From Macrostomum lignano (lineage: Eukaryota): DNA of 40,501 bases. Below the pieces are notes generated by a model that was given only the letters and a program-made list of their open reading frames with translations, was not told the origin of the DNA and searched no databases. Both the position numbers and the translations under genes were made by a program. This document shows positions 17,242 to 40,501 of the stretch, in pieces; positions within the stretch are counted from its first letter, which is position 1, and every line of letters begins with the position of its first letter. The stretch is from positions 1-40,501 of the forward strand of contig NIVC01004613.1 in the NCBI GenBank assembly GCA_002269645.1, given 5' to 3'.

Positions 17242-18375
17242 AACGAAACGCCGAAACCCTTTCAATGAGTCGTTCAAATGCTACACTACTATGGCTTCAA
17301 CTACTAATTCAACGGCCGCGGACGCGACAGCCGACGCTGCAGGCCCTGACAACTCAATGACAAGACCAACCTACGACGAGATGATTCCCGCAGTGACCGA
17401 AGAGGTGCGCCGGCGACTGGAGCAGACCAGCCTGGGCCAGCCGCAACACCATCATCATGTGTACCAGCAGCCCCAGCAGCAGGATCGAGCTCCGGCGCCG
17501 AAACCGGTCAAGATTCAGCGGTATACGCAGAACCAGGAATTCGACATCTGGATCCAGGCTCTGGAAGAGCGTTGCGAGCTCAACGGGATCACAGACGATA
17601 GACGCAAGAAGGCCGAGGCCCTTGTGAACCTGGACATTGCCACAACCTATCCCGCGGTCGTCAGGATGGAGCTGCCAGACAATCTGACGTTTGGTGAGTT
17701 CAAACAACGACTGTCTGAACGCTTTACGCATGTGGCCAACACGCTGGAGTACCGGGAGCAATTCCGAAGCTGCCAGCAAGGCAAGAACGAGAGTGTTGAC
17801 GACTATGGCGATCAACTAATTGCTCTGGCCGATAGAGCATTTCCGCATTTTACCCCGGTTCAGAAGCAGGCTGAACTGGTGGATCAGTTCACAGTGGGAG
17901 TGTGGATTGCTCAGTCGGCAAGAGAACAGCTAATCCTGGTGCGACCGCAGAATCTGACTGCAGCGAGACGGGCCGTGCTACACTTGGAGACAGCAGCTAG
18001 TCTGGCTCAGCGAGTAGCACCGCCGCCAGCAGCGAGACACGTCCGGGTTCTCGAGGATGACAACAGTCAGCCGCCCACTGTGGTGCAACATGATGACAAG
18101 TCATCTCGGCCCAAGGAGAACTGGTTGCGTGAGGTCATGGAACAACAAGTCGAGACTCTGCAAGAGCAGCGACAACTACTGGAGACTTTGAGTAATGAAA
18201 TGCGAGAATTCTACTCACGGGGATCGCGCGACAACGACACCCCGGAGCCATGGGAACCTCGCCATCCGCCGCGGGATTCCTGGGGCCAGCGCAACAGATG
18301 TTTGGTGCCCTCGACTCCTCGCCGCAGCGCCAACGGAAGCGCCCAATTTACGACACCCGGCACGCGAATGGTGCT

Positions 18376-18992
18376 TTCTTTTCTTCACTCCGACCTCCGA
18401 CCGCCCGCAGGCGGCCGGGGCGGGGCCGGGTGGCCGCCAGGGTCGTCGATGGGCGGCTCGGTCCGACCCACCCTCTTGAGGTAGTCACAGATGAGGGCGC
18501 CGCCACCCTCGAGAACGTCGTTCCAGGAAATGACCACCCCGCCCCAGGTGCGGATGCGGGCCTGGTGGTGGCAGGGGCAGTAGAGCATAAGATGATCGAC
18601 CGAGTCCGGTTCTCCGCAGTCGGCGCATCGGTCGTTCTGAGCGAGGCCGAACCGACACAGGGTGTCGCGAGTCAGGGGGGATTTCTTAGTGCGGATTTGG
18701 CTGACCGTCACCTGGCCCCACCTGGGAAGGTCATCGTGGCCTGGCGTCGGAGTCAGGTGCGGATGCGTGCGGTCCCGCGCAGTTCTCCAATTGGACAGTA
18801 CGTGGCGGACGGCATTTTTGGCGGAGGCCTGGGAAAGTTGCGCGGTGTTCGGTTCCAATTCTGCAGCTTCGCGGGCGAGGGCGTCCGCCGCCTCGTTACC
18901 AGCAATGTCCGCGTGGCCAGGAACCCATTGGAAGTGGAGCCTGGTCTGAGCTGGGAGGTCGGTGATGAGTCGCCTGATCGTGAGGACGAGCG
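18376..18992 (-). mobile_element. 5'-truncated non-LTR retrotransposon 3' end (RNase H plus CCHC knuckle; I-group-like)
   Basis: Open frame with RNase H FQWVPGHADIAGNEAADALA and CADC-x7-H-x4-C; stop at 18385-18387 followed by an AGAAAAGAA tail; 14-bp TSD ACGCGAATGGTGCT at 18362-18375 and 18993-19006. Confidence 0.93.
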
Positions 18993-19252
18993 ACGCGAAT
19001 GGTGCTGCAGCTACTGTTCCATCGACTTCAGCAACCTCGAGACGGCAGTAATCCGCCGCCAAGAACGCCGCCAGCAGGAGGTCAACGTCAGCAGCAGCAA
19101 CAGCAGCAGCAGCAGCAGCCGAGTTCAAGGCCGCCGCCTTACCAGCTGCGGCGACAAAGCGCAATGTGCTACAGGTGCAATTGCAAGCATCGTGCCGATG
19201 AGTGCCCGCACCGGCGGTTGGCCAGCACCGCGTCCCAACGCAACGGCAGCTC

Positions 19253-19299
19253 GGGAAATGGGACGGCTGGATGCGCCATCGGGGGCAGCGCCATCCAGC
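19253..19299 (+). promoter_or_regulatory. -1 programmed ribosomal frameshift signal (gag to pol)
   Basis: Heptamer G GGA AAT (19253-19259) in correct gag phase, 6-nt spacer, stem GCTGGATG (19266-19273) / CATCCAGC (19292-19299); pol is in the -1 frame. Confidence 0.75.
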
Positions 19300-22200: not shown

Positions 22201-23836
22201 GGAGCTCCAGACCCCGAACCATGCCGCCACAGCCGAAGCCGCGCCGACAAATTCGACTAATCCGACTAATCGACGCCAAACTCTGAATCTAACTGATCAC
22301 ATTCCGAGGCCAGTCACCCGCGAGGAGCTCCAGACCCATCAGCGAGCTGACTCTGCCATTGCAATGATGATCAACTTAATTGAAAGTCGACAACCGAAGC
22401 CGCCGCTGAATCAGTGATTAAATCTAACAAGAGATGAGCGAAATCTCTTAGCATTCTATGAGCAATTGGAAGTCCGAGACAACAGACTATTAGTCATCCA
22501 TCTCGACGATGTTGGCGAGGAGGACAAAGCGAGGATCGTCCTGCCGAAGAGCCTCGACCCCACTGTGTTTGCCGACCTGCATGGCTCGCCTTACTGCGGA
22601 CACATGGGCTGAGATCTCACCATCGCGAAGGTGCGCGAAAGGTTCTGGCGACTGGTCCTGGCCAAGGCCGTGTCCGACTATGTCGCTTCCTGCCAGACCT
22701 GCACTCAGAGCAAAGGACGGCAACAAATTCTGGCACTTGTACAGTCGTTCCCGGTCTGCGAAATCTATGGGTGATGTGCAATCGACATCCTGGGCCCCAC
22801 TGGAGACCCAACAGACCGCGGCAACAAGTACATCCTCACCTACGTTGACACGACGTCAAAGTATCCATTCGCTTTCGCCATGAAGAATCAGCGGGCCAAG
22901 ACGATTATCACTCTGCTCCAGGAACAAGTGTTTCCAATCACCGGAATCCCGGCATGGATTCACTCCGATCAAGGGAAACAGTTCACAGGACACGAGTTTC
23001 GACATTTCTGCGAAGTCTATGGCATTCGACAGACTACGACGCCGCCATACTCGCCCTGGGCCAGCGGACAAGCTGAGTCGTGCAACAAGAACATCAAGAA
23101 GGTACTCACGTGTCTCCTCGAAGATCATCAACAGTGGGACAAGATGCTGCCAGCCGCTCTGACAGCTCTGAGATCAGCTGTCAACCGTACGACGGGATTC
23201 TCGCCGCATTACGTCATCTACGGAGTGCCCTACCGGTATCCGATCGATAACACCCTAGACCGCCTGGACGTATCGCCGGACCTCCCCGAGTATATCGCAA
23301 AGCATCAGCGCAGACTGGCCGAGACCGAAAGGATTGTACAACAGCGATTGCAAGCTGAGATTCAACGTCGCATAGAGTACTACGAGAACCAACCCAAGCC
23401 TGTGGAACTGCAGCCCGGAGACCTGGTCTGCCTGGCCAACCCGAAGCTCGAGCTGGGCGAGCTGCCGAAGTTCCATCGGCCATACAGAAGCTTGTACAAG
23501 GTCAACAGAAAGGTCGGCAAAGTAGCCTACTGGATCCAGCCTGCAACAGCCCGACGTGGACGTCCAGCAGAAATACTCGTGCATTGCAATAACATCATCA
23601 AGGTGCCGCAGATGATGGCAGATCGACCGCAGGAGCCGCTGCACCAAACTGAGCGGCCAATGCTGCCTTTTGAGTCGAGTGAGGACCCAGCCAATCAGCC
23701 CACTCCAGAACAGCCAGCCGCAGCTCAGCCTGACCTGCGCGGCAGCCAATTGTTCGAGCCAAGTCTCCGCCATCCGGAAGTGCTGCCTGAAGTCAACCCG
23801 GATCTGCCTGACATCGGCATGGAGCTTGAGATCTAA
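19253..23836 (+). pseudogene. pol: Gypsy pol (protease, RT, RNase H, integrase), one frame, 8 in-frame stops, no frameshifts
   Basis: LLDTGS; RT DLNSGYYQI, MPMGL, YLDD; RH DASATRIG, ELLAVV, NADGLSR; IN H-x6-H...CQTC, IDILGP, SDQG, AES. Stops start at 19547, 19853, 20408, 21443, 21485, 22415, 22610, 22772. Confidence 0.95.
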
Positions 23837-24014
23837 AAGGTATTACCAATGAATTTGTTATTGCGCCAAGTTGCTAACTTTTGATGTGCATTACTATTAG
23901 TAGTTGTATTTGCAAATGCATTCCAATTCTAATTTTGCTGTAAGCTTTCTCTGCACCTGCTCTGTGCTGAAAGCCGATTTTAGTTTTTCCATTTAAGTTT
24001 GCCGTTTTGTCATT

Positions 24015-24508
24015 TCTCCTTATGCTTTCCGGATAAAAGCAGGCATCAATTTTCAATTTTAATGTACTTTTCCTTATGCTTCAGGGTAAAAGCAATTTCT
24101 CTTTTCCTTATGCTTTCAGGCTAAAAGCAGGCGTCAAATTTTAATGTACTTTTCTTTATGCTTCAGGGATAAAAGCAGATTCTCTTTTCCTTATGCTTTC
24201 TGGTAAAAGCAGTGTATAGTTTCCTGTGCTCATGTATAGCGCAAAATTTTGCTAATCTATTAAATGCAAATTCTTTAATCAGCACCATGCGCTCTGTAAA
24301 TTTCCTTATGCTTTATGGTGAAAAGCACGCACCAATGCGACAATTTAATCAATGTGTCCTCATTAAACAATGCAATATGGTATGATCATTGCGTTATTTT
24401 GCATTTTTTCTTTCATCTGAATTTTGCGCATCCCTGTTGCTGTAAGCTTCTTCGCACACATTCAAAGTGCAGAAGTGCCCCTTTCCTTATGCTTTCGGGA
24501 GAAAAGCA
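24015..24508 (+). repeat. Seven copies of the hairpin motif TTCCTTATGCTT(T)-Nvar-AAAAGCA downstream of pol
   Basis: Copies at ~24015, 24068, 24102, 24150, 24185, 24301, 24482; conserved TGCTT(T)/(A)AAGCA stem, variable loop. Confidence 0.85.
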
Positions 24509-25281
24509 GTGAATTTGTACACCTTACAGTTTGATTAAAACTGTAGGTAATTTAATTTCTTTTCAGTTTGCAAGCCCACTGTCTAAGGGCCAAACTGTCT
24601 TCTGCCCCGTTCAGGTCAAGCGCCCCCTGGATCCAGGCCTTGTCCTCAGCGGAGGGCATTTGAGGTGACTCGACCCCTGTTCTTTGTTTGTTTTGCTCGA
24701 GCCTGGGAATGTTGTGTGGGCCGCCAATTTGGCTTCCCCTCTCCCAGTGCCAGTTGTTGCCCCTGTTTCATTGTAACTCCTTATGGAGCCCCTTTGCATG
24801 CCATATCGGTAGCTTATTTTATTCTAACGTTCTCCTTAGTACGGAGCCTGTCTGCCTTTGCTCCTTTACTACTTTATTTTATTTTAACTATTATATACGC
24901 GCTAACCAGCCTTTCTTAACCACCCCACTTGATGTGAGCCATTTAAGGCACCCCAATTCATTCTGATTTAGACCCCCACCGCGGTTAGCTATCTGTTTTA
25001 TTACTATGTGATTAGTCACCCACCCTACCTCCGTGCCTACCATAGAGTGCATGAGGGGCGGTGACTGGTGCCTTGTTCCAATGCATGTTTTCCCCCTCAT
25101 TCATCGCTTGGGCAGCCGCTCGCATATTTAAGGCAGCAAAGTGCCCCTCTCCGTCGTCAATTTTGTAAATTTTCTTTGTGCGCTTAGCAAAGTCCAATTT
25201 GCCTCCTATATATATATTTTAGTTATTATTACTGCTACCCATTACTGATTTTGGTTGATTCGTTTGTAACTGGCGGTAGAT

Positions 25282-25887
25282 ATGTGCAACAACGCTATGT
25301 ATGGAGACGCGGCTCTGGAGGACAATGACCCGGCTTTTGATGATGCCTATGACAATGGTCAACTAGGTCCAGCATTTGCCAATGCTCCGCTTGCACCGGC
25401 CCCCAGCCCAGTGTCCAACGATGACCAGTGGCTTGACCAGTTCCTGGCCCAGGTCAGCGCCACCCAAGTACTCCCGGAAATCGACGATGATGCGATCCGA
25501 CTCCTAGAGGCGCGCCCAGAGATGCCCCCACCGCTGCCAGCTGCCTAGTCTAATGGCACGAGTAACGAAGGACAGGCCATGCTGCCCCAGGCCAATGAAA
25601 TGCAGGCCACACTGCAAGAGCCCAAGCTGACCCAGACCCTCGCAGAATTGCTGTACTGGGAGACGATCAGCGGACCTGGGGCTACTCTTATGAACGGCTG
25701 CCGGCTCTGGAGCCAGATCGCTGCCCAATACCCGCAGTCGGAGGTGGTGCTGGCAATCAACACGGCTGCATCACTCGTTGGCCCCATCTACGAGCCGACA
25801 CTGCCGGATAGCAGCTCGGCCCCTGTGCCACCCTGGCTGCCCTGTTTGCAGAATTCGGGCAATGCGACAGGATTCCGGCCCATCTAG
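25282..25887 (+). pseudogene. Additional Gypsy ORF (ORF3 position), ~200 aa across one TAG, function unknown
   Basis: ORFs 25282-25548 and 25579-25887 share a frame; GC-rich coding-like island in the AT-rich 3' region; no obvious signal peptide or TM segment. Confidence 0.55.
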
Positions 25888-26057
25888 AACAGCTCTGCCA
25901 GGATCTGAGGCTTGCCAGCTCGGCTCGGCCCAGGACCAACTGCCAGGGCGATACTGGCGCCGCCAACCAAGGCGGCCACCATTCGGCTGGCAGAGGATGC
26001 CACCACAGCAGCGGCTGACTGCCTAGTTTCTTCTGTTGTGTAGGGCCACCCCGCGCA

Positions 26058-27087
26058 TGTGGCAGGTGGGATGCCACAGTAATTGTTTGGACTCAGTTTT
26101 TTAATAATTTTAAGCGCTATCAAAACTTTAATTTACTGACCCAACCATTGTCTTTTTACCCCAATTTTTGTCCATCGTCTGCCCAGCTCCCTTTCCCTTC
26201 CGTGGCCTGGTTGCGTCCCTTTGCTGTTTTTTGTCATCCCTTCGTTGAAATTTTGTTATCCGCCCTGTCCCAATGTTTTTGAGCCGGTCCATCCCGTGAA
26301 TTTCTGTTTGCCCAGCGTTTGCTTCCAGTACTTGTCAGCCCCCTTTCGGGTATTTATTCTGCTAATTGTTGTGCCCAGTTTCCTCATACCTTCCCCTTCC
26401 TTCCATTTTTTCTCATCCCTACCGTTCTTTTCTGTTTTCCATTTTCCTCAACTAATAAGCTTTGATTCATTAAATTAGTGGTAATATTTTATTGAATTCA
26501 TTTAGCGCACTGGCGCCGCAAGAGCGAATTCATCTTGAGTGTTTAAATAATAGTAATATTAACTTTATTCAGTGCTCACCTGCTATTATCTTAACTAAGT
26601 TACCACAATAAACCGACATCATTAAATTAGCTTTTAATTTCATTTGTTGAGCCATAGCTTCTCTTGAATCATTTGCCCGTGGGGCGTAAAATAACCAAAG
26701 CTCTCATCTTAAAGAAAGCTCTAAGACTTATCCGTTCTGTAATATGTAAATTACAGTGGTGGCAGCAACTACCCTACTGGAAGTAATAAGTTCAGCAAAT
26801 ATACGCATTCATTTATGGTGTCTCATCGCTTTGAACGACCGCGCTGCTACATGACCGCTCTGCTACGATTACGACTACCCTCCCCCCAGACTTGAGAACC
26901 TGGCAGCCGGAGTAAAAGGAGAAAGATTTTTTCTGTTGAGATTCATCTGCATGATTTTTCTGGTTTTATTTGTGCAAACTCAACATTCGGCGGCAATTCA
27001 AACAAGGAATCCGCCCCACCTCACTGGTGTCAGCAAATTTTCAAAACTGACCAATTTCCAAGAAAAATCTTCTCCACCCCCACCTCA
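26058..27087 (+). repeat. 3' LTR (1030 bp)
   Basis: Starts TGTGGCAGG, ends CCACCTCA, followed by TSD AAGG. Confidence 0.95.
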
Positions 27088-28716
27088 AAGGTAACTTATT
27101 GGCACAACACTGGCAAAGATTTGAGAGTGGGCATGAACTCAAATTTTTTTTGGCATGCATTTATAATTATTCAATTTTTGTTTGGGCATGCACCTAGCAT
27201 GATCTAGACTATGGCGCTTAGCTATAACCATAGCTACTCTCCCCCTGACCCTGAGAAACTCAACAGCTAGAGCTCCCCTTTATTTTGCACCAAAATTTCT
27301 GCCCTGCCCTGAAGTTGTTTGTTCAAATTAAGACTAGCACCAATTTGAACAGCCCAAAAGTTGACAACAAAGCTATAAATAGCCAAGAAACTAAGCTTTA
27401 GACTATCTGTCCTCAAAACCCATTAAATCAAAAATAAAAGATTGAACAAAGCTTAAGATATCTTATTAGTGACTAATTACACCTACAGAATTAAAACAAG
27501 ATAGTCTATTTCTATTTTGGGAAAGGAATTTTTTTGGCAAAAGATGCTTTAGCAACAGTGAATTTTTTGTTTCTATATAAATTTTGGCAATACCCTATAA
27601 AATGTGGAATCCACTGCGGAATTGGAATAGAATAGCATAATAAAATGCAGAATCTACAATGGAATGGTAAACTGTGGAATCAACTGCGGAGTCTACAACT
27701 TGAAATAAAATGCAAAATATTGGAATCAAAAAATATAATTTTAAATACAAAGGCACACAATGAATTAAGACCACTTAATACAAATTTGAACATTTAATTC
27801 CATAACTTTCGCAGATTGCAAGAGCATTTTTATCTAATCAGTTATAGATAACTATAGCATCAATCAATTAAAGTAATGATGTGTTAGGTCATTAATTGCA
27901 ATTGAATATAGTTAGATAGAGTCCCTTGTCTCATTTTTTGAATATTGTAAGTCAGACAGTAATAAGACCACTTCAATAATTGTGCTAAGGGTGCTATAAA
28001 AATGGCCCTACTGATTCTGCAAATTTAAAACATCAAACTCAATACTACTCTAAGCCAAAATGATCTCAAACTCTCCTATAGAATGGGGAAAGGCAGAGCT
28101 CTATCGTTTGAGTTATGTAGGAAAATCAAGGCTCTATTAAACCAAGAGTTTCCCAGCGTGCCACAGCCACGCAGCTGGGAAAGTTGAAAATGTGCGTCTA
28201 GCAGGCCCTCAGGGGTTCCTAGTCATTTCGTCATCTGCCATTTCATCATCTGGGTGTCTGGGGTGCTCACCTCGACTATGCGTATGGTCACTTTGTCATC
28301 TTAATTAACATGCACTACCTGAAGAGAGTCATTTTGTCATCCACCAATCATATTAGTTCTAACTTCAAGTGAATTATTGTGGCAATTAAATATATTTACT
28401 TGGAATCCTAATGATCACAGTCATTTTGTCATCTCGATTGATAAAACCTGTCGTTTTTTTCAAGCTACTTTGCTTCTGGTCACTTTGGGCCTTTTCATAT
28501 TGCTTGTTCTGGTTCCAGAACCAGAACCAATTTGTAAAGTATAACTTTTTGTCTCCATAACTAGAGGGAGATACGTGCTATAAAGTTTTTATTATTGAAT
28601 GACAATCGCCAAAAAGAAAATGAAAAATGGTGCTAAGGGAGCTTGTTAAGGCAGTCAAACATTCAACAGAATTAAATAGTTATACTGCTGTTTTTCTTGG
28701 AAGATCCGAACTCCTT

Positions 28717-29137
28717 GGGGAAGGCAAGCAGGGTACAGAAAAGGCAAGCAGGGTGCAGGGAAGGCAATCAGGGTGTGGGGAAGGCAAGCAGGGTGCGGGG
28801 AAGGCACGCAGGGTGCGGGGAAGGCAAGGAGGGTGCGGGGAAGGCAAATAGGGTGCAGGGAAGGCAAGCAGGGTGTGGGGAAGGCAAGCAGCGTGCGGGG
28901 AAGGAAAGAAGGGTGTGGGGAAGGCAAGCAGGGTGTGTGGAAGGCAAGCAGGGTGTGGGGAAAGCAAGGAAAGTGTGGGGAAGGCAAGGAGGGTGCGGGA
29001 AGGCAAGCAGGGTGTGGGGAAGGCAAGCAGGGTGCGGGGAAGGCACGTGTGGGGAAGGCAAGGAGGGTGCGGGGAAGGCACCCTGCGCCTTGCAAGTCTG
29101 CCAAGCACCCTGCGCTTGGGGAAGGCAAGGAGGGTGT
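28717..29137 (+). repeat. 20-bp G-rich minisatellite (GGGGAAGGCAAGCAGGGTGT), outer arm of the left foldback
   Basis: Direct inspection. Confidence 0.95.
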
Positions 29138-29140
29138 GTG

Positions 29141-29680
29141 ACACCCTGCTTGCCTTCCACACACCCTCTTTGCCTTCCCCACACCCTCCTTGCTTTCCCC
29201 ATACCCTGCTTGCCTTCCACACACCCTCTTTGCCTTCCCCACACCCTCATTGCTTTCCCCATACCCTGCTTGCCTTTCCCACACCCTCCTTGCTTTCTCC
29301 ACACCCTGCTTGCCTTCCACACACCCTGCTTGCCTTCCCCGCACCCTGCGTGCCTTCCCCGCACCCTGCTTGCCTTCCCCACACCCTGCTTGCCTTCCCT
29401 GCACCCTGCGTGCCTTCCCCGCACCCTGCTTGCCTTCCCCACCCTGCTTGCCTTCCCCACGCCCTGCTGTCTTTCCCCACACCTTGCTGTCCTTCCCCAC
29501 ACCCTGCCGGCCTTAACCACGCCCTGATGGCCTTCTCCACACGTTTGTGGCCTTCCACACAGCCTGCTTCTTTTCACCATACCATACCCTGCTTGCCTTC
29601 CCTGCACCCTGTTCCCTTCCCTATACCCTGCTGGCCTTCTCCACATCCTGCTGGTCTTCCCCACACCCTGCTACACCCTG
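29141..29680 (-). repeat. Same 20-bp minisatellite inverted, inner arm, degenerating toward the transposase gene
   Basis: ACACCCTGCTTGCCTTCCCC units; switch point AGGGTGT-GTG-ACACCCT at 29131-29147. Confidence 0.95.
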
Positions 29681-29792
29681 GTGAAACTCTGAAGCTTATT
29701 TGTTTCATTTTCTTAATGCAATCTTAGCGTCGACCTCTAACAAAGCGTTTTGTGTTGATACTTTTACTCGTATTTTCTTTGGAAATTATCAG

Positions 29793-32700
29793 ATGTCCAC
29801 ATTTTGCGAATCTGATTTCAGCTACATGGGAAGACGAAAGCAGTCTGTTGCCAAGACGTCAATAAAGTATTGTATTCCTGCGTGTCGTAAGCGAGCACGT
29901 ATCGTTCGAACGCCGGTGACATCGAAATGTTGCATTCCGTAAGTATAACTGTTCAAATGATTCACATATTCTTTCCTTGATCGCTAGTTTTTTCTCTACA
30001 GTGATGCCCAGCCTGTATACAACAATGACCCAGCTGAAGAAGAATGGTTGGATATCCAAGACGACCCTATCGTTGCGGAAGAATTCAAGACTCATGACGA
30101 TCGTGCTCAATGCAAGTCAGCAAAGCCAAGCCGTTTCAAGACCTTTTGCAGTGAAGAAAACAACGCTTGGAATGAGTTATTTCAGTCAGGGGTCCTGACT
30201 GTCGGTTTAGCGGGTCACTACAACAAGCGCCCATGTGTCATTTGCGGTTGCAAGACTGAAATATTCCGGTGCCTTAAGTGTCACTTACTATCGGTCTGCT
30301 CCACTTGCTTAGAGGCCCGCCATGCCCATATGCCGCCCCATGCTGTTGAACGCTGGAATGTAAGTTCATACTATTCGGTTCTGCTTTAATTGTGATTATG
30401 TTGCTTATATTGTATTAAAGTATATATTTCTATACTGTATTGAATGCCTTCTTACATGCATTGAGTATTTTCTAAAATATGATACCTAGCAGCAGTGCTC
30501 TTTTCTACCCGCTCGACAGGGTGACTTTTTTGAGGCCGTTTCATCACAAGTGCGGCTTTCTCGGCTGTGCAGCTGTCTTCTCTACAGCGTACTTTCGGTC
30601 ACTATTGTGACTGATGATGGTAATTCTTGGCTGAATTTTGCATTTTTCCTGTTTGCAATAGCTCACTTTGTTAACATAACAAGTCACGTGAACGTGAATG
30701 CTCTAAGTTGCAATATGACGCCGATTGCTACAAAACAAACATCCTATTTAGGAGACACCGATATTCTAGCAAGACTTCACCCAATCAATATAAGTGCTCA
30801 CTACTTCATTTCAGGAATCGAACTGAAAGCCATTCTAGAGATGTGTACATGCACTATGTACCACGCAGCTCTTCTAGCACACAGATTTTGGCCCTTGCAG
30901 CCTCGACCAGAGGGCTCTCGGGAACTGACTGCCGTGTCTATTGAACTGCTACTTCTAATCGATTCGCTGAATTGCAACTGCACAGCATCGTTGTCTTCCA
31001 TTTGCAGTGCTATTAGGCGCTCCAAGAAGTCACTGTGGGCGCAGTCATCAACATCAGAAAGTTCTTTATCAGAATACACAGCTGGCTATTATTCTGTAAT
31101 AGTGTGATGCAGCGTTTACAATCAGTCATTCTCATACCTTTAAATTTTAGATCGATTTATTTAGAGCGCTCAACGTAACTGGGGCGTTCCGGTCTTTCCG
31201 CCGTGTGCTGCAGAGCTTTCGATGGGGAAGAAGGCCATCATGTCCAGCATGCTATGTGGTACAAGATCTTCCTTTCATATATGTATAATCGTACTCTCTC
31301 TCTTTGCAATTCGCTGATTGGCTTTTATCTAAATACCATGTACCTTCCGTAGGTTGATTTGGACTCTGATGCAGAAAAGAGCAGTCCAATTTTCCTGATG
31401 ATGGACGCCTGCTTTGGTCTCCGCCATCAGAGAACTGCAGGCAGAGCTACTTCACCAACTCCAAGTGGCTTTTTCGTTGACTTTGACCTTACTGAAGATC
31501 ACAACCCCTCTGCAGGACACTGTGCGAACTGGAGAGCAGGTGGAAGAGGTCAAACACTAACGACTGCTGCAGACCGGGCCAAACTGGACGTGTTTGGGGC
31601 CTTTTCTGGTTCCTGCAGACACTCTGCTATACGCTACTTGTCCGACATTACTACTCCAGGCGAACGGTAACTAATTGATTGTAATAGAACTTTGTTGCCG
31701 GACTAATTAGCCACATTTTTGCATATTGATAGTGGCAGAGTGGTTATTGTTTTATTCAGTGATTTTATATTGTTTGCAAACTCTAGGAAGACTTAGTGGG
31801 TTGGAGAATAAAGAATGCCTAGCAGTTGGTGTGAGCTGTCGACCAATTAGAAAGGAGAAGGGCTGACAGAATATTAGCGAAGTAAACAAGAAGTAAACAA
31901 GAAAAGTGCAGAGAACTAAGGAATGTATGCTCGTATATAGAAAACGTAAAATGAAAACGAAAGTCGCCGCAATAGTCACAACGTACGCTTTAATTTAAGT
32001 GCAAACTCCGATCAATTCAATCACCAGGCTCAACTACGCCACAACAATGGTTGCCAAAATTTTGGAGGACGTTCCTCCAATGGTTCCCGTTGTTGTCTCA
32101 TACGATATTGGGTGCAAACTGGCTGGTCAGTTTAACGACACTCGTTGTCATTCGCTGTACCGGCGTTTTACAATTACGGGCACGTTCTGCGCTGTCAACT
32201 GACATATGGAATTTGCTCTATTGCCTCCGTTGGCTTGACCGATGGTGAAAGTGTAGAGAGAGTCTGGGCGGATCTGCGACGTTTCGGCCCTCAGGTTAAA
32301 GAGATGGCGCATGACAATCGGCGCGAATTTCTCAATTATCTTGCCGACAGCATGAATTTTCACTGCATTACAAATATCAGTAAGGTTATTATATAGGCTG
32401 ATTAATTATCTGTATTAATATTATTCCATAGAGTATTGAATTGATACCTTAATGCATGGTTGTTGAAATTTTGCGTGAAAAATACGGCAAGCTTAGGCTA
32501 CACATGCTTTAAGCTTTAAGCTTAAACAGTTTAGGCTACACACTTTTTTCTTTTTAGCTACCTGGCTGAGTCACCGCCGAACGGTCCAAAAGAAGGCAGT
32601 GCAACAATTCGAAGCTGACTTTGCTGCATTTCAAGCGCGCCACAATGTGCCCGGTTAGTCCTGACTCACTCCTCATAATTAATCTGTCAATCAAATATTA

Positions 32701-33515
32701 ATAATTTATTACATTAAATATTTGCTGTATCTCCATTAGTGACTCTTGAAGAATTCCTTCAAGAGGCAGCCGATTGGAGGCAAGAGCTGATCAATGTGCT
32801 ATCATCTGCGCGTGAGTCATCTTCGTCCAAGTCGGAGACTATCCGGAAACTATTCGGCATTGCCTGCGAGCGTCAGTATTTACTCAAACATGCGGCAACA
32901 GAGCGTGGTCAACGTATGAACAGGCTACTTCGAGTAGCGACAGACAAGCTGCTCCGCAAGACGAAGACAGTCTGTTCAAAGTTTAACAGCAAAAATCCAA
33001 CGGACCTACTTGATTGGAATAACTTCATTTCGACAGATGCCTCTGGCTTCCAGCAGCTTATAAATGGAGGCACTGTCCGTGTCGAGGTCCTAACTCACAA
33101 GGTGCAAGCCGTAAAACTTCGCGATCTGTACTTTTGATGCTCGGAAGAATCGCTCCTGGTGACTTCAGAGGCAAAGCATGTTTATAATTTTCTTTCTGCT
33201 GCCGTTCTAACTGTGAGCTCAGAGTTGCAAGCCGCCCGAGATAGCAACAGCCCACTCACTGCAGTATTATCTCTTCGGCTAAGTGGTATATTGCGCTAAC
33301 GCCATGCTCATGAAGCAGCTTTCCCGTTCGGAGCTGTGGCAGAGACACAAGTGGATTCGGAGTCGGGCGATTCTCATGACAGTGAATCGGACAATTCGCA
33401 AGCTTTATTGTCTGACAGTGACGATGACTCCGAGTTCAACTTGGAAGGTCAACTGGAACAGGGAAAGGCCGTCAGGGTGTGGGGAATGCCAGCAGGGTAT
33501 AGTAAAGGCCAATAG
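29793..33515 (+). pseudogene. Intron-containing KDZ (Kyakuja-Dileera-Zisupton) transposase with N-terminal CxC cysteine clusters; exons 29793-29938, 30002-30359, 30520-30619, 30815-31034, 31165-31258, 31353-31666, 32028-32379, 32558-32653, 32740-33515
   Basis: CVIC..FRCLKC..CSTC..H..PPH..WNGDFF; CTC..LL..FWP; CPAC; MDACFGL; FSGSCRH..GER; VSYDIGC; VPAFYNYGH..CQ; GLTDGESVERVW; acidic tail. Introns GT-AG in phase. Lesions: 1-nt deletion at ~32145, TGA 33135, TAA 33297. Confidence 0.85.
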
Positions 33516-35040
33516 GGCATGGGAACAAGTGCTAGGACACGGTAAAAAATCATCAAGATATGGTGATGATATCTTAACAGGGTTGGGTAAGGCCATCAGG
33601 GTGTGGGGAAGGCAAGCAGGGTGCGGGGAAGGCAAGCAGGGTGTGGGGAAGGACAGAAGGGTGTGGGGAAGGCAAGCAGGGTGTGGGGAAGGCAAGCAGG
33701 GTGTGGGGAAAGCAAGGAAGGTGTGGGGAAGGCAAGCAGCGTGCGGGGAAGGCAAGCAGGGTGCGGGGAAGGCAAGCAGGGTGCGGGGAAGGCAATCAGG
33801 GTGTAGGGAAGGCAAGCAGGGTGCGGGGAAGGCACGCAGGGTGCGGGGAAGGCAAGTAGGGTGCGGGGAAGGCAAGCAGGGTGTGGGGAAGGCAAGCAGC
33901 GTGCGGGGAAGGACAGAAGGGTGTGGGGAAGGCAAGCAGGGTGTGTGGAAGGCAAGCAGGGTGTGGGGAAAGCAAGGAGGGTGTGGGGAAGGCAAGCAGG
34001 GTATGGGGAAAGCAAGGAGGGTGTAGGGAAGGCAAGCAGGGTGTGGGGAAGGCAAGCAGGGTGTGGGGAAGGCAAGCAGCGTGCGGGGAAGGACAGAAGG
34101 GTGTTGGGAAGGCAAGCAGGGTGTGTGGAAGGCAAGCAAGGTGTGGGGAAAGCAAGGAGGGTGTGGGGAAGGCAAGCAGGGTATGGTGAAAGCAAGGAGG
34201 GTGCGGGGAAGGACAGCAGGGTGTGGGGAAGGCAAGCAGGGTGTGTGGAAGGCAAGCAGGGTGTGGGGAAAGCAAGGAGGGTGTGGGGAAGGCAAGCAGG
34301 GTATGGGGAAAGCAAGGAGGATGTAGGGAAGGCAAGCAGGGTGTGGGGAAGGCAAGCAGGGTGTGGGGAAGGCAAGCAGCGTGCGGGGAAGGACAGAAGG
34401 GTGTTGGGAAGGCAAGCAGGGTGTGTGGAAGGCAAGCAAGGTGTGGGGAAAGCAAGGAGGGTGTGGGGAAGGCAAGCAGGGTATGGGGAAAGCAAGGAGG
34501 GTGCGGGGAAGGACCGCAGGGTGTGGGGAAGGCAAGCAGGGTATGGGAAAGGGTAGCAGGGACAGAGAGTAGGGAAGGCCAGCAGGGTATGGAAAGGGCC
34601 ACCAGGATGTGGGGAAGGCCTGCATTGGTAAGAAAGGGTAGCAGGGTGTGGAAAGCCACTAGGGTATAGTGAAGGGCAATAGGATATAGAGAAAGCTAGC
34701 AGGGTATAGACAAAGGTGGCAGGGTATAGTGAAAAACAGCAAGGTATAGAAAAGGCCACCAGGATGTAGGGAAGGTCTGCATAGGTAGGGCCTAAGAAAG
34801 GGTAGCAGCATATAGGAAGGCCAGTGGGTATAAGGAAGGCTAACAGAATGTGGAAAAGGCTAGCAGGATATGGGAAAAGCCAGTAGGGTATAAGAAGGCC
34901 AGCATGATATAATGAAGGCTAGCAGGAAATAGTAAAAAGCAGCAAGGTATAGAGAAGGCTAGCAGCAGGATATAGACAAAAGTGGCAGGGTATAGTGAAA
35001 AATAGCAGGGTATAGAGAAGGCTAGCAGGGTATGTGTGGG
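33460..35040 (+). repeat. Right 20-bp G-rich minisatellite array with higher-order repeats, degenerate at both edges
   Basis: Core 33590-34550 is near-perfect; same variant order as the left arrays. Confidence 0.95.
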
Positions 35041-37432
35041 GAAGAAAAAGGTTAAAAAACAAAAAATAGAACCTTTTAAATACTAAATACTAATTGGCTT
35101 AGCCTATAACATAAAATAGTAGAATAGAACCAAATTTAATAATAAACTTTAAAATATAAATAATAACTCCATTTATGGAATTTTATGCTAGCAGCTAGTT
35201 ATACTAGGTATATATAATAGGCTATAGTCTATTAGAACCCTAAATTATGCCTGCTCAATATATCAGTTATAGCTTTACTAGATAGTTTCTCTCCTAAACT
35301 CAGTGTTCAAAAAGTAGGATATATAGCCTTAGATTAGTCACACAGTTATTGAGTTACAAAATTGTGCATAGGCCTAGCTACAAACTGAGCGCCATCCTAT
35401 TCCTGTCACGCTTTAAAGTTCACTTAAGTCAGGTCGAGTCTTATTGTTCTCTTGTTCTAATATTAATTCGCTATTTCAGTGATGTGGAAATAATAAACAG
35501 CTAGAGCTACATAAAATAATGTCAAATGTTTCGATACTTGTAACTTTAGAAGTCATCCTAATTATCTAGCATTACTGTACTAGAAAATAGTAGTAAAATC
35601 GCTACTTTGCATAGTGAATTATATAAAAATGAGCAGAAACGGCTGTTCAAATTTGTGCCATTTTGGGGCCTAAGTGCGCATACAAAAGGCAATCAATAGC
35701 ATGCTACCGTATCATATAGCATGACACGGACCGCCTTATAGGCGGTTTTTGCCGTGTTCTATACCGCCTAATGTGTATATACGGCTGTTCTGGAATTGGT
35801 AATATGAAAAGCCTCTTTGTCATCGGATATGACGAAATGGAATATGCCGACGTGACCACGTGACCCTAGACTCTGACTGTAATGATCTTGAATATGGTAG
35901 TAAATTACCCCGAGATTACTTGTGCCCAGAAAGATTCAAAAAGTTTATATTTTTTAAACCAAATATACCAAATCTTTCATATCTAAAAGGCATTGTTTCT
36001 GCCTAATTAAATTTTGAGTACGCCTGGCTTTCTTAATTTTTTCTAAAAATTTCGCGCTTTTTTAATTTAGCGGTAAATTTGAATAGCGCAAGGCGCTATG
36101 GACCGCGTGGCGGAGGCTAATTATTATTGCCTGAGCCAAATTCTTACTACTACTACTAGTACTATAAAAAAAGTTCTGACTGACTGTTTGCTGCCAAATT
36201 GACTTGTCGCTGAATTGACTGTTGCCGCGTCAACCTGTCGCCGAATTAACTGGTTCAATCTGTATATCTCTACATATAAATCAACACTTCATTAATAAAA
36301 CCAAACTATGCTATGTAATACTAATAGGCCTACTATCAAAGGCAAAGTTTTTTAATCAATGTACTAATTTCGTAACAGATATTTAAAATTTTAAACAGAC
36401 AATTAAAATAAACATTTAATGTTTTTTGCCAAAGGGGCAAAGATGGTCAAAGCCTCAATGTAGACTTTATTTTCATAATTTTTTATGCATTTTTAGGCAT
36501 TCTTTTGATGTAAAACTAAGGGCAAGGTATTATTTTTATAGTTGAAAGAAAATAAAATATATATCAAGAAACTATAACTATACTATAGTTTAGCAACAAA
36601 AAATTTTTAGTATTATAATTCATTTTAAGTGCTTAAAGCCTCATTTAAAGGTTGAGACATTGTCACATTATTGGTATAGTGGCTGTAACCCTCAAAAGGG
36701 CCATTTTGACAAAAATTACTTGGCGCGTTAAGTCATTGTAGTCCTAAATTAATTGTGAAGTCAAATTCTTGCGGAGCAGATTGTGTAGCAGAGCACTTGG
36801 CATATAAAGGCAGAGGACTACCGTAAGCTGGTTTATTGTCATTATTAATATGGTTAATGTCAATACAAGCTTATAGCGTTCTGGGGCACTGGCGGCTGTA
36901 GTAGTAGTAGTAGTAAATTTGGCTTAGGCTTAAGGAGCCTGTTTTGCCAGTATAATCCATTGTATTTAGTATTTGTTTATAAGGTTAAATTTTTACACGA
37001 GTTACGATATTTGTAAAAGTAAGGTATTTAAAAGAGCATCTAGAGTTTTTTTAAATGGTTTTCCAGCTGATTAACAACTAACGCCAGAATAACAAGATTC
37101 TAAGCAGGGAAAAATAAAAAATCAATGTTGTATATGTATATATATATATTAGATATTAGTTAGATATTAACAAATATAACAAATATCAAGTATAATTAAG
37201 GATAGCTCTACAATAATAGGCAATTTTTGTAAAAAGATATAATATTTTTGAAAGCGTGTGATATTTCAAAGCGTGAAAAACAAACATAAACATAAGCTAC
37301 TTCGAACAAACTTAGCATCTAACGAGTAACAATGATTTCAATAGGAAATTAAAAAAGACAATAAATGAATAAATAACTGAAAAGCAGATTTGTTACACTG
37401 CTAATGTATCTGATTCAGTTTGTTTAACTGTT

Positions 37433-38189: not shown

Positions 38190-38530
38190 GATTATTGCAC
38201 TATCTGAGAAAGGACTATTGTATTGCACTAGCTTAGAAAGGGATTATTGTGCTAGTTAAGATACAGGTCAATGCATTTAATAATTTGATAAAAAATAATG
38301 CACTTGATAAGTAAAGAATTATTGCACTTGATGAGAAAAGGATTATTGCACTAAGGGATATTGCACTAGACAGGGATTATTGCATTGGCTTAAAACAGAA
38401 CTATTGCACTGGCTAAGAAATTGATTATTGTAGTAGATAAAAATGATTTTTGCATTAGCTGAAAAAAGGATTATTGCACTAGCTAGGAAATGATTATTGT
38501 GGTAGTTGAGACATGGATTATTGCATAATC
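38190..38530. repeat. Degenerate tandem repeat, core GATTATTGCACT
   Basis: Core recurs about 10 times at irregular spacing. Confidence 0.7.
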
Positions 38531-38755: not shown

Positions 38756-39289
38756 TCGATCAGAAATTTTCCCGTGACGGTACATGCATCGTGGCTAAGA
38801 AATTGCTCGATGCTAAAGGCATTAAATATTCGAAAAACATGCTTTTTTGCAAAGGTCAAGCAAACTTTTCGACTTGAAATGCATTGTAAGAATGCTAGAG
38901 AAAAAACTGACTGGTTGAATTCTGATTCTGAAATAGATTGCATCATAACTGAATTGTAACTCCGACTTGAATTGAAAATGCAGTGTGGAAGCATAGCACC
39001 AGACTTGATTTAAATTTCGTAATCATATTTATTGTTAACTGATACTGACTGACTGAGAAACTGATTATGACATAATTGCTTCGTGTGATTTACTCTATGC
39101 TTGGATTTTAAAGTGTTGAATTATATAAGTGCAAAATTTGATGTTATCAAAACGATGAGAGCTAGACTAGAGGTAAACAGACTGAACTGCTAAATGCAGC
39201 GACGATGGTTCGAATTTTCATAGAGTATAATTTTTTTAATTAAAGCTTTTCAACATCAGGAAAACTAAAATACTTTTAAGAAGAAGCGT

Positions 39290-40501
39290 CGTGTAAAAAT
39301 CATAGAAGCGCCATGTAAAAAATCATAGAAGTGTCATGTAAAAAATCATAGAAGCGTCATGTAAACAATCATAGAAGTGTCATGTAAAAAATCGTAGAAG
39401 CATTATATAAAAATCATAGAAGCGTCATGTAAAAATTCATAGAAGCGTCATGTAAACAATCATAGAAGCGTCATGTAAACAATCATAGAAGCGTCATTTA
39501 AAAATCACAGATGCATCATTTAAAAAATCATAGAAGCGTCATGTAAACAATCATAGAAGCGTCATGTAAAAAATCAGAGAAGCGTCATGTAAACAATCAT
39601 AGAAGCGTCATGTAAACAATCATAGAAGCGCCATGTAAAAAATTGTAGAAGCGTCATGTAAACAATCATAGAAGCGTCATGTAAAAAATCATAGAAGCGT
39701 CATAAAAAATCAGAGAAGCGTCATGTAAAAAATCGTAGAAGTGTCATTTAAAAATCATAGAAGCATTATTTAAAAATCATAGAAGCGTCATGTAAACAAT
39801 CATAGAAGCATCATGTAAACAATCATAGAAGCGTCATGTAAAAACTCTTAGAAGCGTCATTTGAAAATCATAGAAGCGTTATTTAAAAAAATCATAGAAG
39901 CGTCATGTAAACAATCATAGAAGCGTCATGTAAACAATCATGTAAGCGTCATGTAAAAAATCATAGAAGCGTCATGTAAAAAATTGTAGAAGTGTCATGT
40001 AAAAAATCATAGAAGCGTCATGTAAAAAATCGTAGAAGCGTCATGTAAACAATCATAGAAGCGTCATGTAAAAATCATAGAAGCGCCATGTAAAAATCAT
40101 AGAAGCGTCATGTAAAAATTCATAGAAGCATCATGTAAACAATCATAGAAGCGTCATGTAAACAATCATAGAAGCGTCATTTAAAATCACAGATGCGTCA
40201 TTTAAAAAATCATAGAAGCGTCATGTAAACAATCATAGAAGCGTCATGTAAAAATCAGAGAAGCGTCATGTAAAATCATAGAAGCGTCATGTAAACAATC
40301 ATAGAAGCGCCATGTAAAAAATTGTAGAAGCGTCATGTAAACAATCATAGAAGCGTCATGTAAAAAATCATAGAAGCATCATATAAAAAATCATAGAAGC
40401 GTCATGTAAAAAATTGTAGAAGTGTCATTTAAAAATCATAGAAGCATTATTTAAAAAATCATAGAAGCGTCATGTAAACAATCATAGAAGCATCATGTAA
40501 A
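39290..40501. repeat. 22-23-bp tandem satellite (ATCATAGAAGCGTCATGTAAACA), ~50 copies, runs off the window
   Basis: Direct inspection. Confidence 0.98.

What the first reader, a model, noticed from the sequence alone, without database searches (positions are those of the whole stretch)
28717..35040. Best candidate system: 9-exon KDZ transposase enclosed by inverted G-rich minisatellite arms
Seen: a spliced CxC-plus-KDZ transposase lacking the SWIM/SAP/protease domains of fish Zisupton, flanked left by a C-strand array and right by a G-strand array of the same 20-mer with the same variant order. The ORF tail runs into the right array. I found no conventional short TIR/TSD. Established: KDZ transposases are known from fungi (Kyakuja, Dileera) and fish (Zisupton) and are poorly characterised in invertebrates. 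Inference: a Kyakuja-like family whose ends are long, variable-length inverted minisatellites, so it may also disperse this minisatellite.
Basis: partly seen in the sequence, partly recalled or inferred. Interest (0 to 1): 0.75.

Follow-up and report, generated by a model that had tools for sequence, protein, structure and literature searches.

The report
Dead KDZ transposon with minisatellite arms
This is a broken, no longer functional copy of a KDZ-type "jumping gene" from a Macrostomum flatworm; its gene sits between inverted blocks of one 20-base repeat, and the whole 7-kb unit landed inside a smaller mobile element, so the repeats belong to the inserted DNA, though one copy cannot show that they are its working ends.

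Summary
The gene is real. It has nine GT-AG exons (29793-33515, + strand) and matches Pfam KDZ at E=7.7e-33. It has no SWIM, SAP or protease domain. Its nearest relatives are Macrostomum lignano KDZ paralogs (36-54% identity).

It is a pseudogene: a 1-bp frameshift in exon 7, two in-frame stops in exon 9, and Tyr in place of an invariant His.

The order is G-strand array (28717-29080), 60-bp junction, C-strand array (29141-29672), gene, G-strand array (33460-35040). The left flank is therefore itself a palindrome.

New evidence fixes the boundaries. A 266-bp MITE that is intact in an M. lignano contig is split in the window at 28711 and 35788. About 7.07 kb was therefore inserted as a block: the arrays, the gene and a 750-bp AT-rich tail. 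The arrays came in with that DNA, or grew from it. They were not a pre-existing satellite.

The block has no TSD or TIR at its ends, and only this one copy was available.

Best reading (about 0.5): a decayed, rearranged, foldback-like KDZ transposon. This would be a new variant of known kinds, of moderate interest.

The parts
28488..28711 (+). Left part of MITE 'R', the target of the insertion
   Evidence: 90.5% identical over 232 aligned columns to M. lignano L001 18128-18356, where R is uninterrupted. R has its own TIR (GGCCTTTCATATT / AATATGAAAAGCC) and a ~5-bp CTTTG duplication at its window flanks.
28717..29080 (+). Left outer array GL: 20-mer, G-rich strand, about 18 units, sharp outer edge
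   Evidence: TRF period 20, 18.5 copies. Pattern hits on the + strand. Direct repeat of 33725-34004 at 92%, p~0.002.
29081..29140 (.). Junction of the palindrome, with three G/C strand switches at 2-4-nt microhomologies
   Evidence: Read directly from the sequence. Lowest 20-mer match scores in the array region, 11-12 of 20.
29141..29672 (-). Left inner array CL: 20-mer, C-rich strand; clean at 29141-29460, degenerate towards the gene
   Evidence: TRF 26.5 copies. Pattern hits on the - strand. 91% complementary to 33765-34064. Forms a hairpin with GL, dG -375 kcal/mol, z=-26.
29793..33515 (+). KDZ transposase pseudogene, 9 exons: 29793-29938, 30002-30359, 30520-30619, 30815-31095, 31151-31258, 31353-31666, 32028-32379, 32558-32653, 32740-33515
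   Evidence: GT/AG at all 8 introns. Pfam KDZ E=7.7e-33. 36-54% identity to M. lignano KDZ proteins. Full-length alignment with P0002.
32136..32145 (+). Frameshift in exon 7 between the YDIGCK motif (second catalytic Asp) and AVPAF(Y)NYGH. Consistent with a 1-bp deletion in ...ACT CGT TG TCA...
   Evidence: Frame change seen in the three-frame translation. Paralogs read RLTF / RLRF here without a shift. A homopolymer error in the assembly cannot be excluded for this lesion alone.
32169..32171 (+). Tyr codon (TAC) at a His that is invariant in all aligned KDZ proteins (H439 in P0002 numbering)
   Evidence: Alignments A1, A4 and A5.
33135..33137 (+). In-frame TGA in exon 9, where paralog P0001 has Arg (…KLRDLYF R C…)
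33297..33299 (+). In-frame TAA in exon 9
33460..35040 (+). Right array GR: 20-mer, G-rich strand. Small degenerate island 33460-33500, clean core 33580-34560 with a 300-bp higher-order repeat, degenerate A-enriched outer part 34560-35040
   Evidence: TRF 49-72 copies. Offset-300 self-identity 92.8% against ~85% at other offsets, and the per-window match profile.
35045..35787 (.). AT-rich, non-repetitive tail inside the inserted block, of unknown role (possibly an outer terminal domain or filler)
   Evidence: 20-mer match score at background level, 7-12 of 20. Unique in all sequence held. No inverted copy of its end elsewhere in the window.
35788..35813 (+). Right part of MITE 'R', including its right TIR
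   Evidence: The 28/28 blast match spans 35788-35815 = L001 18366-18393, which lies 9 bp after the end of the left-part match in L001.

Best explanation
The locus is an old, inactivated copy of a cut-and-paste DNA transposon of the KDZ superfamily, in Macrostomum lignano or a close congener. Its architecture is foldback-like.

Shown:
- The central gene is a 9-exon KDZ transposase gene. The acidic positions D349, D462 and E512/E515 are invariant across the aligned paralogs, and there are N-terminal Cys/His clusters.
- The gene lies between inverted arrays of one 20-bp unit: C-type array, then gene, then G-type array.
- The arrays, the gene and a 750-bp tail entered a 266-bp MITE as one ~7.07-kb block.

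Inferred:
- In the live element, the 20-bp units in opposite orientation on the two arms served as reiterated binding sites for the transposase's zinc-chelating N-terminus. Internal tandem repeats in the long TIRs of Galileo and FB elements work this way.
- Array length drifted by unequal exchange. The 300-bp higher-order repeat in the right arm is the trace of this.
- At or near the time of insertion the left arm was broken within the array and capped by an inverted copy (GL) through strand or template switching. Three strand switches lie in the 60-bp junction. This event removed the left outer domain, any TSD and ~9 bp of the MITE.
- The gene then decayed, and the element is now inert. The nonsense and missense lesions look like C-to-T changes: Arg to TGA (shown by the paralog alignment), TAA probably from CAA, and His to Tyr. 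There is also a 1-bp deletion.
For: KDZ identity:
- Pfam PF18758 E=7.7e-33.
- Full-length alignment to M. lignano KDZ proteins with invariant D/D/E positions and a C127...H162 cluster.

Introns shared with the paralog.

Inverted arms:
-, with matching polarity. Both arrays are degenerate at the gene-proximal edge and clean further out.
- The ancestral C-terminus lies at ~33440 and degenerate 20-mers start at 33460, so no separate KDZ terminus fits between gene and array.

Insertion as one block:
- MITE R is intact in L001 18128-18393 and split in the window at 28711 and 35788.
- The left array begins 5 bp from that boundary.
- The 20-mer occurs nowhere else in the window, and no other inverted arrays occur in the window.

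Timing:
- All three arrays are about equally diverged, at 89-92%. This fits GL arising at about the time the arms began to diverge.

In-situ array dynamics:
- 300-bp higher-order repeat.

Parallels in the same genome:
- The M. lignano KDZ locus L001/L002 carries co-duplicated arrays of variable length. The 19-mer array has 78 versus 60 copies, and the 40-mer arrays have 17.4 versus 6.3 and 22.1 versus 16.5 copies.
- It also has a [C-type][loop][G-type] inverted array pair of the same polarity.

Precedent:
- Foldback-like elements with tandem repeats inside long TIRs exist in the Mutator and P superfamilies, and those repeats bind transposase in Galileo (PMC4079207, PMC3169594).
- A mobile KDZ element without detectable TIRs is documented: KDZx1 (PMC11343200).
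Against: - There is no TIR and no 8-bp (or any) TSD at the ends of the inserted block.
- The right end of the block is 750 bp of non-array DNA with no mirror on the left.
- The left side has an extra G-array that the model must explain by a secondary rearrangement.
- There is only one copy. The 20-mer is absent from the 62 kb of M. lignano DNA I could read and from JGI metagenomes.
- The only paralogous KDZ locus available has different arrays, in introns and downstream, not as matching arms around the gene.
- This genome is very rich in minisatellites: about 9 other arrays in the 33 kb outside the block. Arrays as such are cheap here.
- Shared variant order between the inverted arms is weak, p~0.025.
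- Transposase binding to the 20-mer is pure inference.
Confidence: 0.5

Rival explanations
1. Ordinary KDZ pseudogene plus locally grown repeats. The KDZ element had conventional termini: the right one perhaps at 35787, the left one lost. The 20-mer arrays are minisatellites that arose and expanded in situ from element-internal sequence. They were then duplicated and inverted by replication or repair errors in a repeat-prone genome. They have no role as transposon ends or binding sites.
For: - The block ends in non-array DNA on the right.
- There is no symmetry at the true block ends.
- The junction with three strand switches looks like template switching, not transposase action.
- The 300-bp higher-order repeat shows in-situ growth.
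- The genome is full of unrelated minisatellites, including inside introns of the paralogous KDZ gene.
- The three arrays are copies of one ~400-bp ancestral segment. Local duplication plus inversion would produce exactly that.
Against: - Both arms have old, degenerate edges facing the gene in mirror symmetry. The inverted layout is therefore as old as the arrays.
- A chance inversion would have to place the same array on both sides of the gene at 120 bp and ~0 bp from the coding sequence.
- In the sequence available, all three inverted minisatellite pairs lie in or next to KDZ genes. The sample is small.
Confidence: 0.27
2. Two elements, not one. An independent foldback-type element whose arms are the 20-mer arrays is mobilised by some other transposase. 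The KDZ gene is a passenger or a nested insertion in its middle domain, as NOF sits inside Drosophila FB.
For: - GL|CL on its own looks like a complete arms-only foldback unit.
- Comparable arms-plus-loop units with other repeat units exist in M. lignano. One is the 14/28-mer pair L001 10518-12812, lying inside a KDZ intron. The other is the 2.9-kb-arm palindrome 21555-28258 with 40-mer arrays.
- According to PMC4079207, most foldback elements described so far belong to the Mutator superfamily, with exceptions.
Against: - There are no KDZ-specific termini or TSD between gene and arrays. The coding sequence runs directly into degenerate 20-mers.
- No second transposase gene lies in the block.
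Confidence: 0.15
3. Assembly artefact. The palindrome and the array layout result from mis-assembly of long, error-prone reads through a minisatellite.
For: - Palindromic and tandem structures are hard to assemble.
- The exon-7 frameshift falls in a short T run.
Against: - The arms differ by 8-10% with many private variants, unlike a read-through-adapter chimera.
- The arrays are flanked by consistent unique sequence, and the split MITE halves are collinear.
- The two nonsense codons are substitutions, not indels.
Confidence: 0.03

Closest known systems
KDZ (Kyakuja-Dileera-Zisupton) DNA transposons, e.g. Cryptococcus KDZ1-3 and KDZx1, fish Zisupton, Puccinia Dileera
   Same: - Same transposase domain (PF18758, E=7.7e-33), with an upstream Cys-rich region.
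- The unit is large, ~7 kb against 6-11 kb.
- KDZx1 also lacks detectable TIRs (PMC11343200).
   Different: - Known elements make 8-bp TSDs and mostly have plain TIRs, for example 236 bp in KDZ1 (PMC11343200, PMC12730594). Here there is no TSD.
- The inverted parts are 0.5-1.6-kb arrays of a 20-mer.
- There are no SWIM, SAP or protease domains as in Zisupton, and no TET/JBP gene.
- The host is a flatworm, and the gene has 8 introns.
Foldback-like transposons: Drosophila FB, Galileo (P superfamily), Tetris, Tm1 (Mutator/Foldback)
   Same: - Long inverted arms built largely of short tandem repeats.
- Variable arm length.
- A central domain that may hold the transposase gene.
- A tendency to seed satellite-like arrays and rearrangements (PMC4079207, PMC3169594).
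   Different: - The transposase belongs to a different superfamily (KDZ).
- No outer unique TIR domain is shared by both ends.
- No TSD, and no second copy, so foldback membership is structural resemblance only.
CACTA/En-Spm-type subterminal repeat regions (from general knowledge, not tested here)
   Same: Short motifs reiterated in direct and inverted orientation near both ends, acting as transposase-binding sites.
   Different: - CACTA elements have defined CACTA termini and 3-bp TSDs.
- Their subterminal regions span a few hundred bp of interspersed motifs, not kilobase head-to-tail arrays.
Satellite-carrying Helentron/Helitron non-autonomous elements of oysters
   Same: Mobile elements that carry and disperse short tandem-repeat arrays (PMC7492417). 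They insert without TIRs or TSDs.
   Different: - There is no Rep/helicase gene here.
- No convincing 5'-TC...CTRR-3' ends, and no hairpin 10-12 nt from the end. The nearest hairpin is ~40 nt in.
- The protein here is a DDE-type KDZ transposase.

Membership tests
KDZ transposase superfamily | KDZ transposase domain (Pfam PF18758) above the gathering score | tested here: met
   114.5 bits against a cutoff of 26.6, E=7.7e-33, residues 344-548 of the conceptual protein. The paralogs all score 1e-19 to 1e-41.
KDZ transposase superfamily | Conserved acidic residues in the LDACF, YDI(A/G)C and DGE..ER motifs | tested here: met
   D349, D462, E512 and E515 are invariant in alignment A3; alignments A1 and A4 agree. 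Their assignment as catalytic residues is inferred from the family, not shown. An invariant His next to them is Tyr in this copy.
KDZ transposase superfamily | CxC-type cysteine cluster N-terminal to the KDZ domain | tested here: inconclusive
   CxC1 E=0.7 for the window protein, and 4e-4 to 1e-3 in M. lignano paralogs. It exceeds the cutoff only in the Branchiostoma relative P0014 (45.3 bits). Conserved Cys columns are present.
KDZ transposons (element level) | 8-bp target site duplication | tested here: not met
   Insertion boundaries were fixed by the split MITE. The best direct match around them is 5 bp and falls outside plausible junctions. About 9 bp of the MITE are missing instead.
KDZ transposons (element level) | Terminal inverted repeats at the element ends | tested here: not met
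   The left end of the block is the G-array and the right end is unique AT-rich DNA. No inverted copy of the right end exists in the window. The inverted arrays are internal.
KDZ transposons (element level) | Multiple dispersed copies or evidence of mobility | not testable with these tools
   No eukaryotic genome could be searched by DNA. The loci of paralogs P0155, P0010 and P0013 could not be fetched. Only the single split-MITE insertion was seen.
Zisupton sensu stricto | SWIM zinc finger, with SAP or Ulp1-protease modules, together with CxC4 | tested here: not met
   No such Pfam hit at E<=1.
Kyakuja clade | Phylogenetic placement with reference Kyakuja transposases | not tested
   No labelled Kyakuja, Dileera or Zisupton reference sequences were available. 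The nearest non-flatworm relatives are unnamed metazoan proteins from amphioxus, sea urchin, Priapulus, mussel and Astyanax.
Foldback-like elements (structural class) | Long inverted arms composed of tandem repeats around a middle domain | tested here: met
   C-array 29141-29672 against G-array 33460-35040: 300 nt at 91% complementarity, with mirror-symmetric decay towards the gene.
Foldback-like elements (structural class) | Arms extend to the element termini, bounded by TSDs | tested here: not met
   The left boundary coincides with an array, but in the wrong orientation (GL). The right boundary lies 750 bp beyond the array. No TSD.
Foldback-like elements (structural class) | Family of copies, including arms-only derivatives | not testable with these tools
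   The 20-mer was not found in any other held sequence.

The most novel reading that the evidence does not exclude
Macrostomum flatworms harbour a lineage of KDZ transposons that evolved a foldback architecture. Their ends are kilobase-scale inverted arrays of a short G-rich unit recognised by the transposase's Cys-rich N-terminus. Such elements and their arms-only derivatives would seed and disperse minisatellites, and would create palindromes at their ends, contributing to the repeat-rich genome seen here. This would be the first foldback-type organisation in the KDZ superfamily, and the first structurally described KDZ transposon in a protostome.
Probability: 0.3. Interest if true: 0.65.

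Novelty: new variant of a known kind. Interest (0 to 1): 0.45.

Why it matters
- KDZ transposons have been characterised as elements in fungi and fish (PMC12730594, PMC11343200). In invertebrates the database hits found here are mostly unnamed predicted proteins.
- A KDZ element with foldback-like minisatellite arms would show that this architecture has arisen independently in a third DNA-transposon superfamily, after Mutator and P.
- It would also give a concrete source for some of the many minisatellites and palindromes seen in the Macrostomum sequence examined here.
- The split MITE gives a clean filled-site versus intact-paralog comparison, which can be repeated genome-wide.
- As it stands, this is one dead, rearranged copy. 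The finding is a good lead, not a demonstrated new element type.

Tried and rejected
1. Three homolog searches. Only two Macrostomum KDZ proteins were returned. A chimeric profile (KDZ plus translated array) found no array-derived ORFs and did not return P0155, P0010 or P0013, so their genomic loci could not be fetched. P0001 has no contig on record.
2. Full HMMER scan with P0002. It gave the taxonomic context but no copy closer than 54% identity.
3. Metagenome scans. The 20-mer dimer had 0 hits. KDZ loci L003-L008 are distant (<=46% identity over short segments), and TRF on the two longest, L005 and L007, found no minisatellite arrays. They were uninformative.
4. TSD and TIR searches at the block ends were negative. 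A search for an inverted copy of the L001/L002 left boundary was also negative. L001's right boundary is an assembly gap.
5. The tail 35045-35787 was tested as a degenerate array or a known repeat. It is neither.
6. A Helitron-like reading of the block ends was rejected: no CTRR end, and the hairpin is too far from the end.
7. Shared core GGCAAGCA between the 20-mer and the 14/28-mer arrays in the paralog's intron. The match is real but weak: an 8-nt match has p~0.014 by shuffling, and another unrelated array in the window also shares an 8-mer. I kept it only as a lead.
8. The AlphaFold model of P0002 from an 8-sequence alignment had mean pLDDT 44 and pTM 0.27. It was too poor for a fold search, so none was run.
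9. A PDB sequence search with the N-terminal region found no hits. Rfam on the window found no hits.
10. The loop of the L001 14-mer palindrome shows no relation to KDZ proteins or to this block.
Full report
WHAT IS THERE

Tandem Repeats Finder and a mismatch-tolerant pattern search show that the 20-mer GGGGAAGGCAAGCAGGGTGT is massively over-represented. It has 85 hits at <=3 mismatches against 0.01 expected, and all lie within 28717-34590.

From left to right it is:
- GL, a G-strand array, 28717-29080, about 18 units.
- A 60-bp junction, 29081-29140.
- CL, a C-strand array, 29141-29672, clean up to ~29460 and then decaying towards the gene.
- A 120-bp spacer.
- The gene.
- GR, a G-strand array. 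It has a small degenerate island at 33460-33500, a clean core at 33580-34560, and a degenerate, A-enriched outer part up to ~35040.

GL and CL form a palindrome with ~300-bp arms. As single-stranded DNA it folds with dG -375 kcal/mol and z=-26. CL and GR are inverted relative to each other, 300 nt at 91% complementarity.

All three arrays are copies of one ancestral ~400-bp stretch, at 89-92% pairwise identity. The register-specific match to GR is clearer for the direct pair GL/GR (92.1%, unit-shuffle p~0.002) than for the inverted pair CL/GR (90.7%, p~0.025). GR has since grown by a 300-bp (15-unit) higher-order repeat: self-identity at offset 300 is 92.8%, against ~85% at other offsets.

THE GENE

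Three-frame translation and splice-site inspection give nine exons with GT..AG at all eight introns.

The conceptual 845-residue product matches Pfam KDZ (PF18758) at 114.5 bits, E=7.7e-33. It has no SWIM, SAP or protease hit, and CxC1 reaches only E=0.7.

It aligns end to end with Macrostomum lignano KDZ proteins:
- P0012 at 54% and P0001 at 53%, both partial.
- P0009 at 44% over almost the full length.
- P0002 at 36%.

Seven of eight intron positions coincide with those of P0002 in its genomic locus. Three groups of residues are invariant across the paralogs:
- the acidic positions D349, D462 and E512/E515;
- the cluster C127-x2-C-x8-C-x2-C-x5-C-x2-C-x4-H-x5-H;
- further Cys columns upstream of the KDZ domain.

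The copy is dead:
- The frame shifts between YDIGCKLAGQFNDT and SFAVPAFYNYGH. This is consistent with a 1-bp deletion at ~32138-32143.
- TGA at 33135-33137 replaces an Arg of the paralog.
- TAA lies at 33297-33299.
- The His of the AVPAFH.YGH motif, invariant even in fungal relatives, is Tyr (32169-32171).

The paralogs end in an acidic Ser/Asp tail that aligns with ...SDSDDDSEF at ~33440. The 'ORF tail running into the array' is therefore ~25 extra codons, the last ~18 of which read degenerate 20-mers.

WHOSE GENOME

All close protein relatives are from M. lignano. Two window segments match an M. lignano contig (NIVC01000126.1, locus L001) at the DNA level, at 95.8% and 90.5%. The window therefore comes from M. 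lignano or a close congener. This is an inference.

The next relatives of this KDZ clade are unnamed metazoan proteins from amphioxus, sea urchins, Priapulus, mussels, Astyanax and a sea star. Fungal proteins come after those.

THE KEY NEW OBSERVATION: A SPLIT MITE

In L001 a ~266-bp element, R (18128-18393), is uninterrupted. It has TIR-like ends GGCCTTTCATATT / AATATGAAAAGCC. In the window R has different outer flanks and its own ~5-bp CTTTG duplication, but it is split:
- 28488-28711 matches L001 18128-18356.
- 35788-35815 matches L001 18366-18393, 28/28.

About 7.07 kb therefore entered R as a block, or as a nest. It comprises GL, the junction, CL, the gene, GR and a 750-bp AT-rich unique tail (35045-35787). 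Two conclusions follow.

First, the arrays were not a pre-existing satellite into which a KDZ element jumped. They belong to the inserted DNA, and GL starts 5 bp from the left boundary.

Second, the true ends of the inserted DNA are not a pair of inverted arrays:
- The right end is unique sequence that is not a decayed array.
- That sequence has no inverted counterpart.
- There is no TSD of 8 bp or any other convincing length.
- Instead, ~9 bp of R (cgattctga in L001) are missing or unrecognisable.

HOW IT MOST LIKELY CAME ABOUT AND WORKED

Shown: a KDZ gene flanked by inverted arrays of one unit, all inside one inserted block. Both arrays have old, degenerate edges facing the gene. The coding sequence abuts the right array with no space for separate KDZ termini.

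Inferred: the live ancestor was a foldback-like KDZ transposon whose arms carried reiterated 20-bp binding sites for the transposase's zinc-chelating N-terminus. This is documented for the tandem repeats within Galileo's long TIRs, and it is typical of FB, Tetris and Tm1 elements (PMC4079207, PMC3169594). The tail may be the right outer domain.

The left arm lacks such a domain. It is cut inside the clean array and capped by its mirror image, GL. The 60-bp junction switches strand three times at 2-4-nt microhomologies...GGGGAAGGCA|CCCTGCGCC......CCCTGCGCTT|GGGGAAGG......GTGTGTG|ACACCCTGC.... That is the signature of template switching or fold-back repair, not of transposase cleavage.

GL, CL and GR are about equally diverged. 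The capping is therefore about as old as the arms' divergence, and it may have happened during an aberrant integration. That would also explain the missing TSD and the small deletion in R. Afterwards GR expanded and the gene decayed. I put this composite model at about 0.5.

RIVALS

(a) The arrays are in-situ-grown minisatellites, duplicated and inverted by repair errors, with no role as ends (0.27).
- The window has about nine other arrays in the 33 kb outside the block.
- The paralogous KDZ locus has unrelated arrays inside introns 1 and 2.

(b) An independent foldback element carries KDZ as a passenger, like FB-NOF (0.15).
- Arms-plus-loop units with other repeat units do exist in M. lignano. 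One is a 14/28-mer pair at L001 10518-12812, with the same C-type...G-type polarity, inside KDZ intron 1. The other is a palindrome with 2.9-kb arms and 40-mer arrays just downstream of that gene.
- Against this rival, there are no KDZ-specific termini between gene and arrays.

(c) Assembly artefact (0.03). This is unlikely given 8-10% arm divergence and collinear MITE halves.

COMPARATIVE EVIDENCE IS THIN

- The two M. lignano copies of the P0002 locus (L001, L002; >99% identical over >=23 kb, with different left flanks) show that arrays travel with a duplicated KDZ unit and vary in length between copies. Their arrangement is not the same as in the window.
- In the ~100 kb I could read, all three inverted minisatellite pairs lie in or beside KDZ genes, and none lies elsewhere. 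This is suggestive, but the sample is tiny.
- A shared GGCAAGCA core between the 20-mer and the 14/28-mer units is real but statistically weak.
- I could not obtain any second copy of this KDZ lineage or of the 20-mer.

COMPARISON WITH KNOWN SYSTEMS

At the protein level, membership in the KDZ superfamily is met. At the element level, the defining 8-bp TSD and TIRs were tested and not met for this copy, although a TIR-less mobile KDZ element (KDZx1) is on record (PMC11343200). Zisupton sensu stricto is excluded by domain content. 'Kyakuja-like' is untested.

Structurally, the closest analogues are foldback-like elements of the Mutator and P superfamilies. The resemblance concerns the arms only, because termini, TSDs and copy families could not be shown.

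VERDICT

If confirmed genome-wide, a foldback-type KDZ family would be a new variant of known kinds, of moderate interest to transposon and satellite biologists. On present evidence it is one decayed, rearranged insertion. Interest: 0.45.

Noticed in passing
window 28488-28711 + 35788-35813; L001 18128-18393: A ~266-bp MITE ('R') with ~14-bp TIRs (GGCCTTTCATATT...) and ~5-bp flanking duplications. It is present in both the window and an M. lignano KDZ intron. In the window it is the target of the 7-kb insertion.
   Followed up: yes
window 17159-23836 (+), with 18385-19164 (-): ORFs of a Ty3/gypsy-like LTR retroelement: gag-like, RT plus RNase H, and integrase (Pfam RVT_1 1e-29, rve 2e-9). It appears to be interrupted by a fragment of a non-LTR retroelement on the opposite strand (RNase_H, zf-RVT).
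   Followed up: partly
window 8495-8853: A 360-bp repeat, 95.8% identical (reverse strand) to L001 17173-17529, which lies in an intron of the M. lignano KDZ gene P0002. It is probably another dispersed short element, and it is the best clue to the species of origin.
   Followed up: partly
window 7497-7723; L001/L002 10518-11584 and 12041-12812: A 14/28-mer array (GCCGAAATCTGCTA...) in the window is 75-82% similar to an inverted pair of 14/28-mer arrays in intron 1 of the M. lignano KDZ gene. Those units share the core GGCAAGCA with the 20-mer. The link is statistically weak (p~0.014 for an 8-nt match).
   Followed up: partly
L001 21555-28258 (L002 21200-27841): A large palindrome just downstream of the M. 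lignano KDZ gene. Its arms are ~2.9 kb at 99% identity, with 40-mer arrays at the inner ends and a 1.1-kb loop, which is the canonical foldback layout. A diverged (87.5%) copy of part of the arm lies upstream of the gene at 8882-9549.
   Followed up: partly
window 10339-11539: A 1.2-kb unit bounded by 71-nt inverted repeats that are 99% complementary, which looks like a small, young DNA transposon. The 177-aa ORF that overlaps its right arm (11004-11537) has no Pfam match.
   Followed up: no
window 12730-13540: A 33-mer array (24.6 copies, 97% identity) that is open in several frames. The minus-strand ORF 12559-13590 encodes an 11-residue repeat (APPSDGAPCTE) followed by a basic tail. It may be a repetitive coding exon. 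No Pfam match.
   Followed up: no
window 1235-1696 (-): The C-terminal part of a TatD-related DNase (Pfam PF01026, E=1e-21). It is the only apparent host gene fragment in the window.
   Followed up: partly
window 1-339, 817-1181, 3299-4459, 5496-5805, 6160-6342, 38193-38499, 39282-40501: There is a high density of unrelated tandem arrays: 35-mer, 69-mer, 1.16 kb of (AGAC)n, G-rich 22-mer and 28-mer arrays, a 24-mer, and a 23-mer array that runs off the window end. L001 also has an inverted (GTCT)n / (GACA)n microsatellite pair at 2004-2303 and 3058-3160.
   Followed up: no
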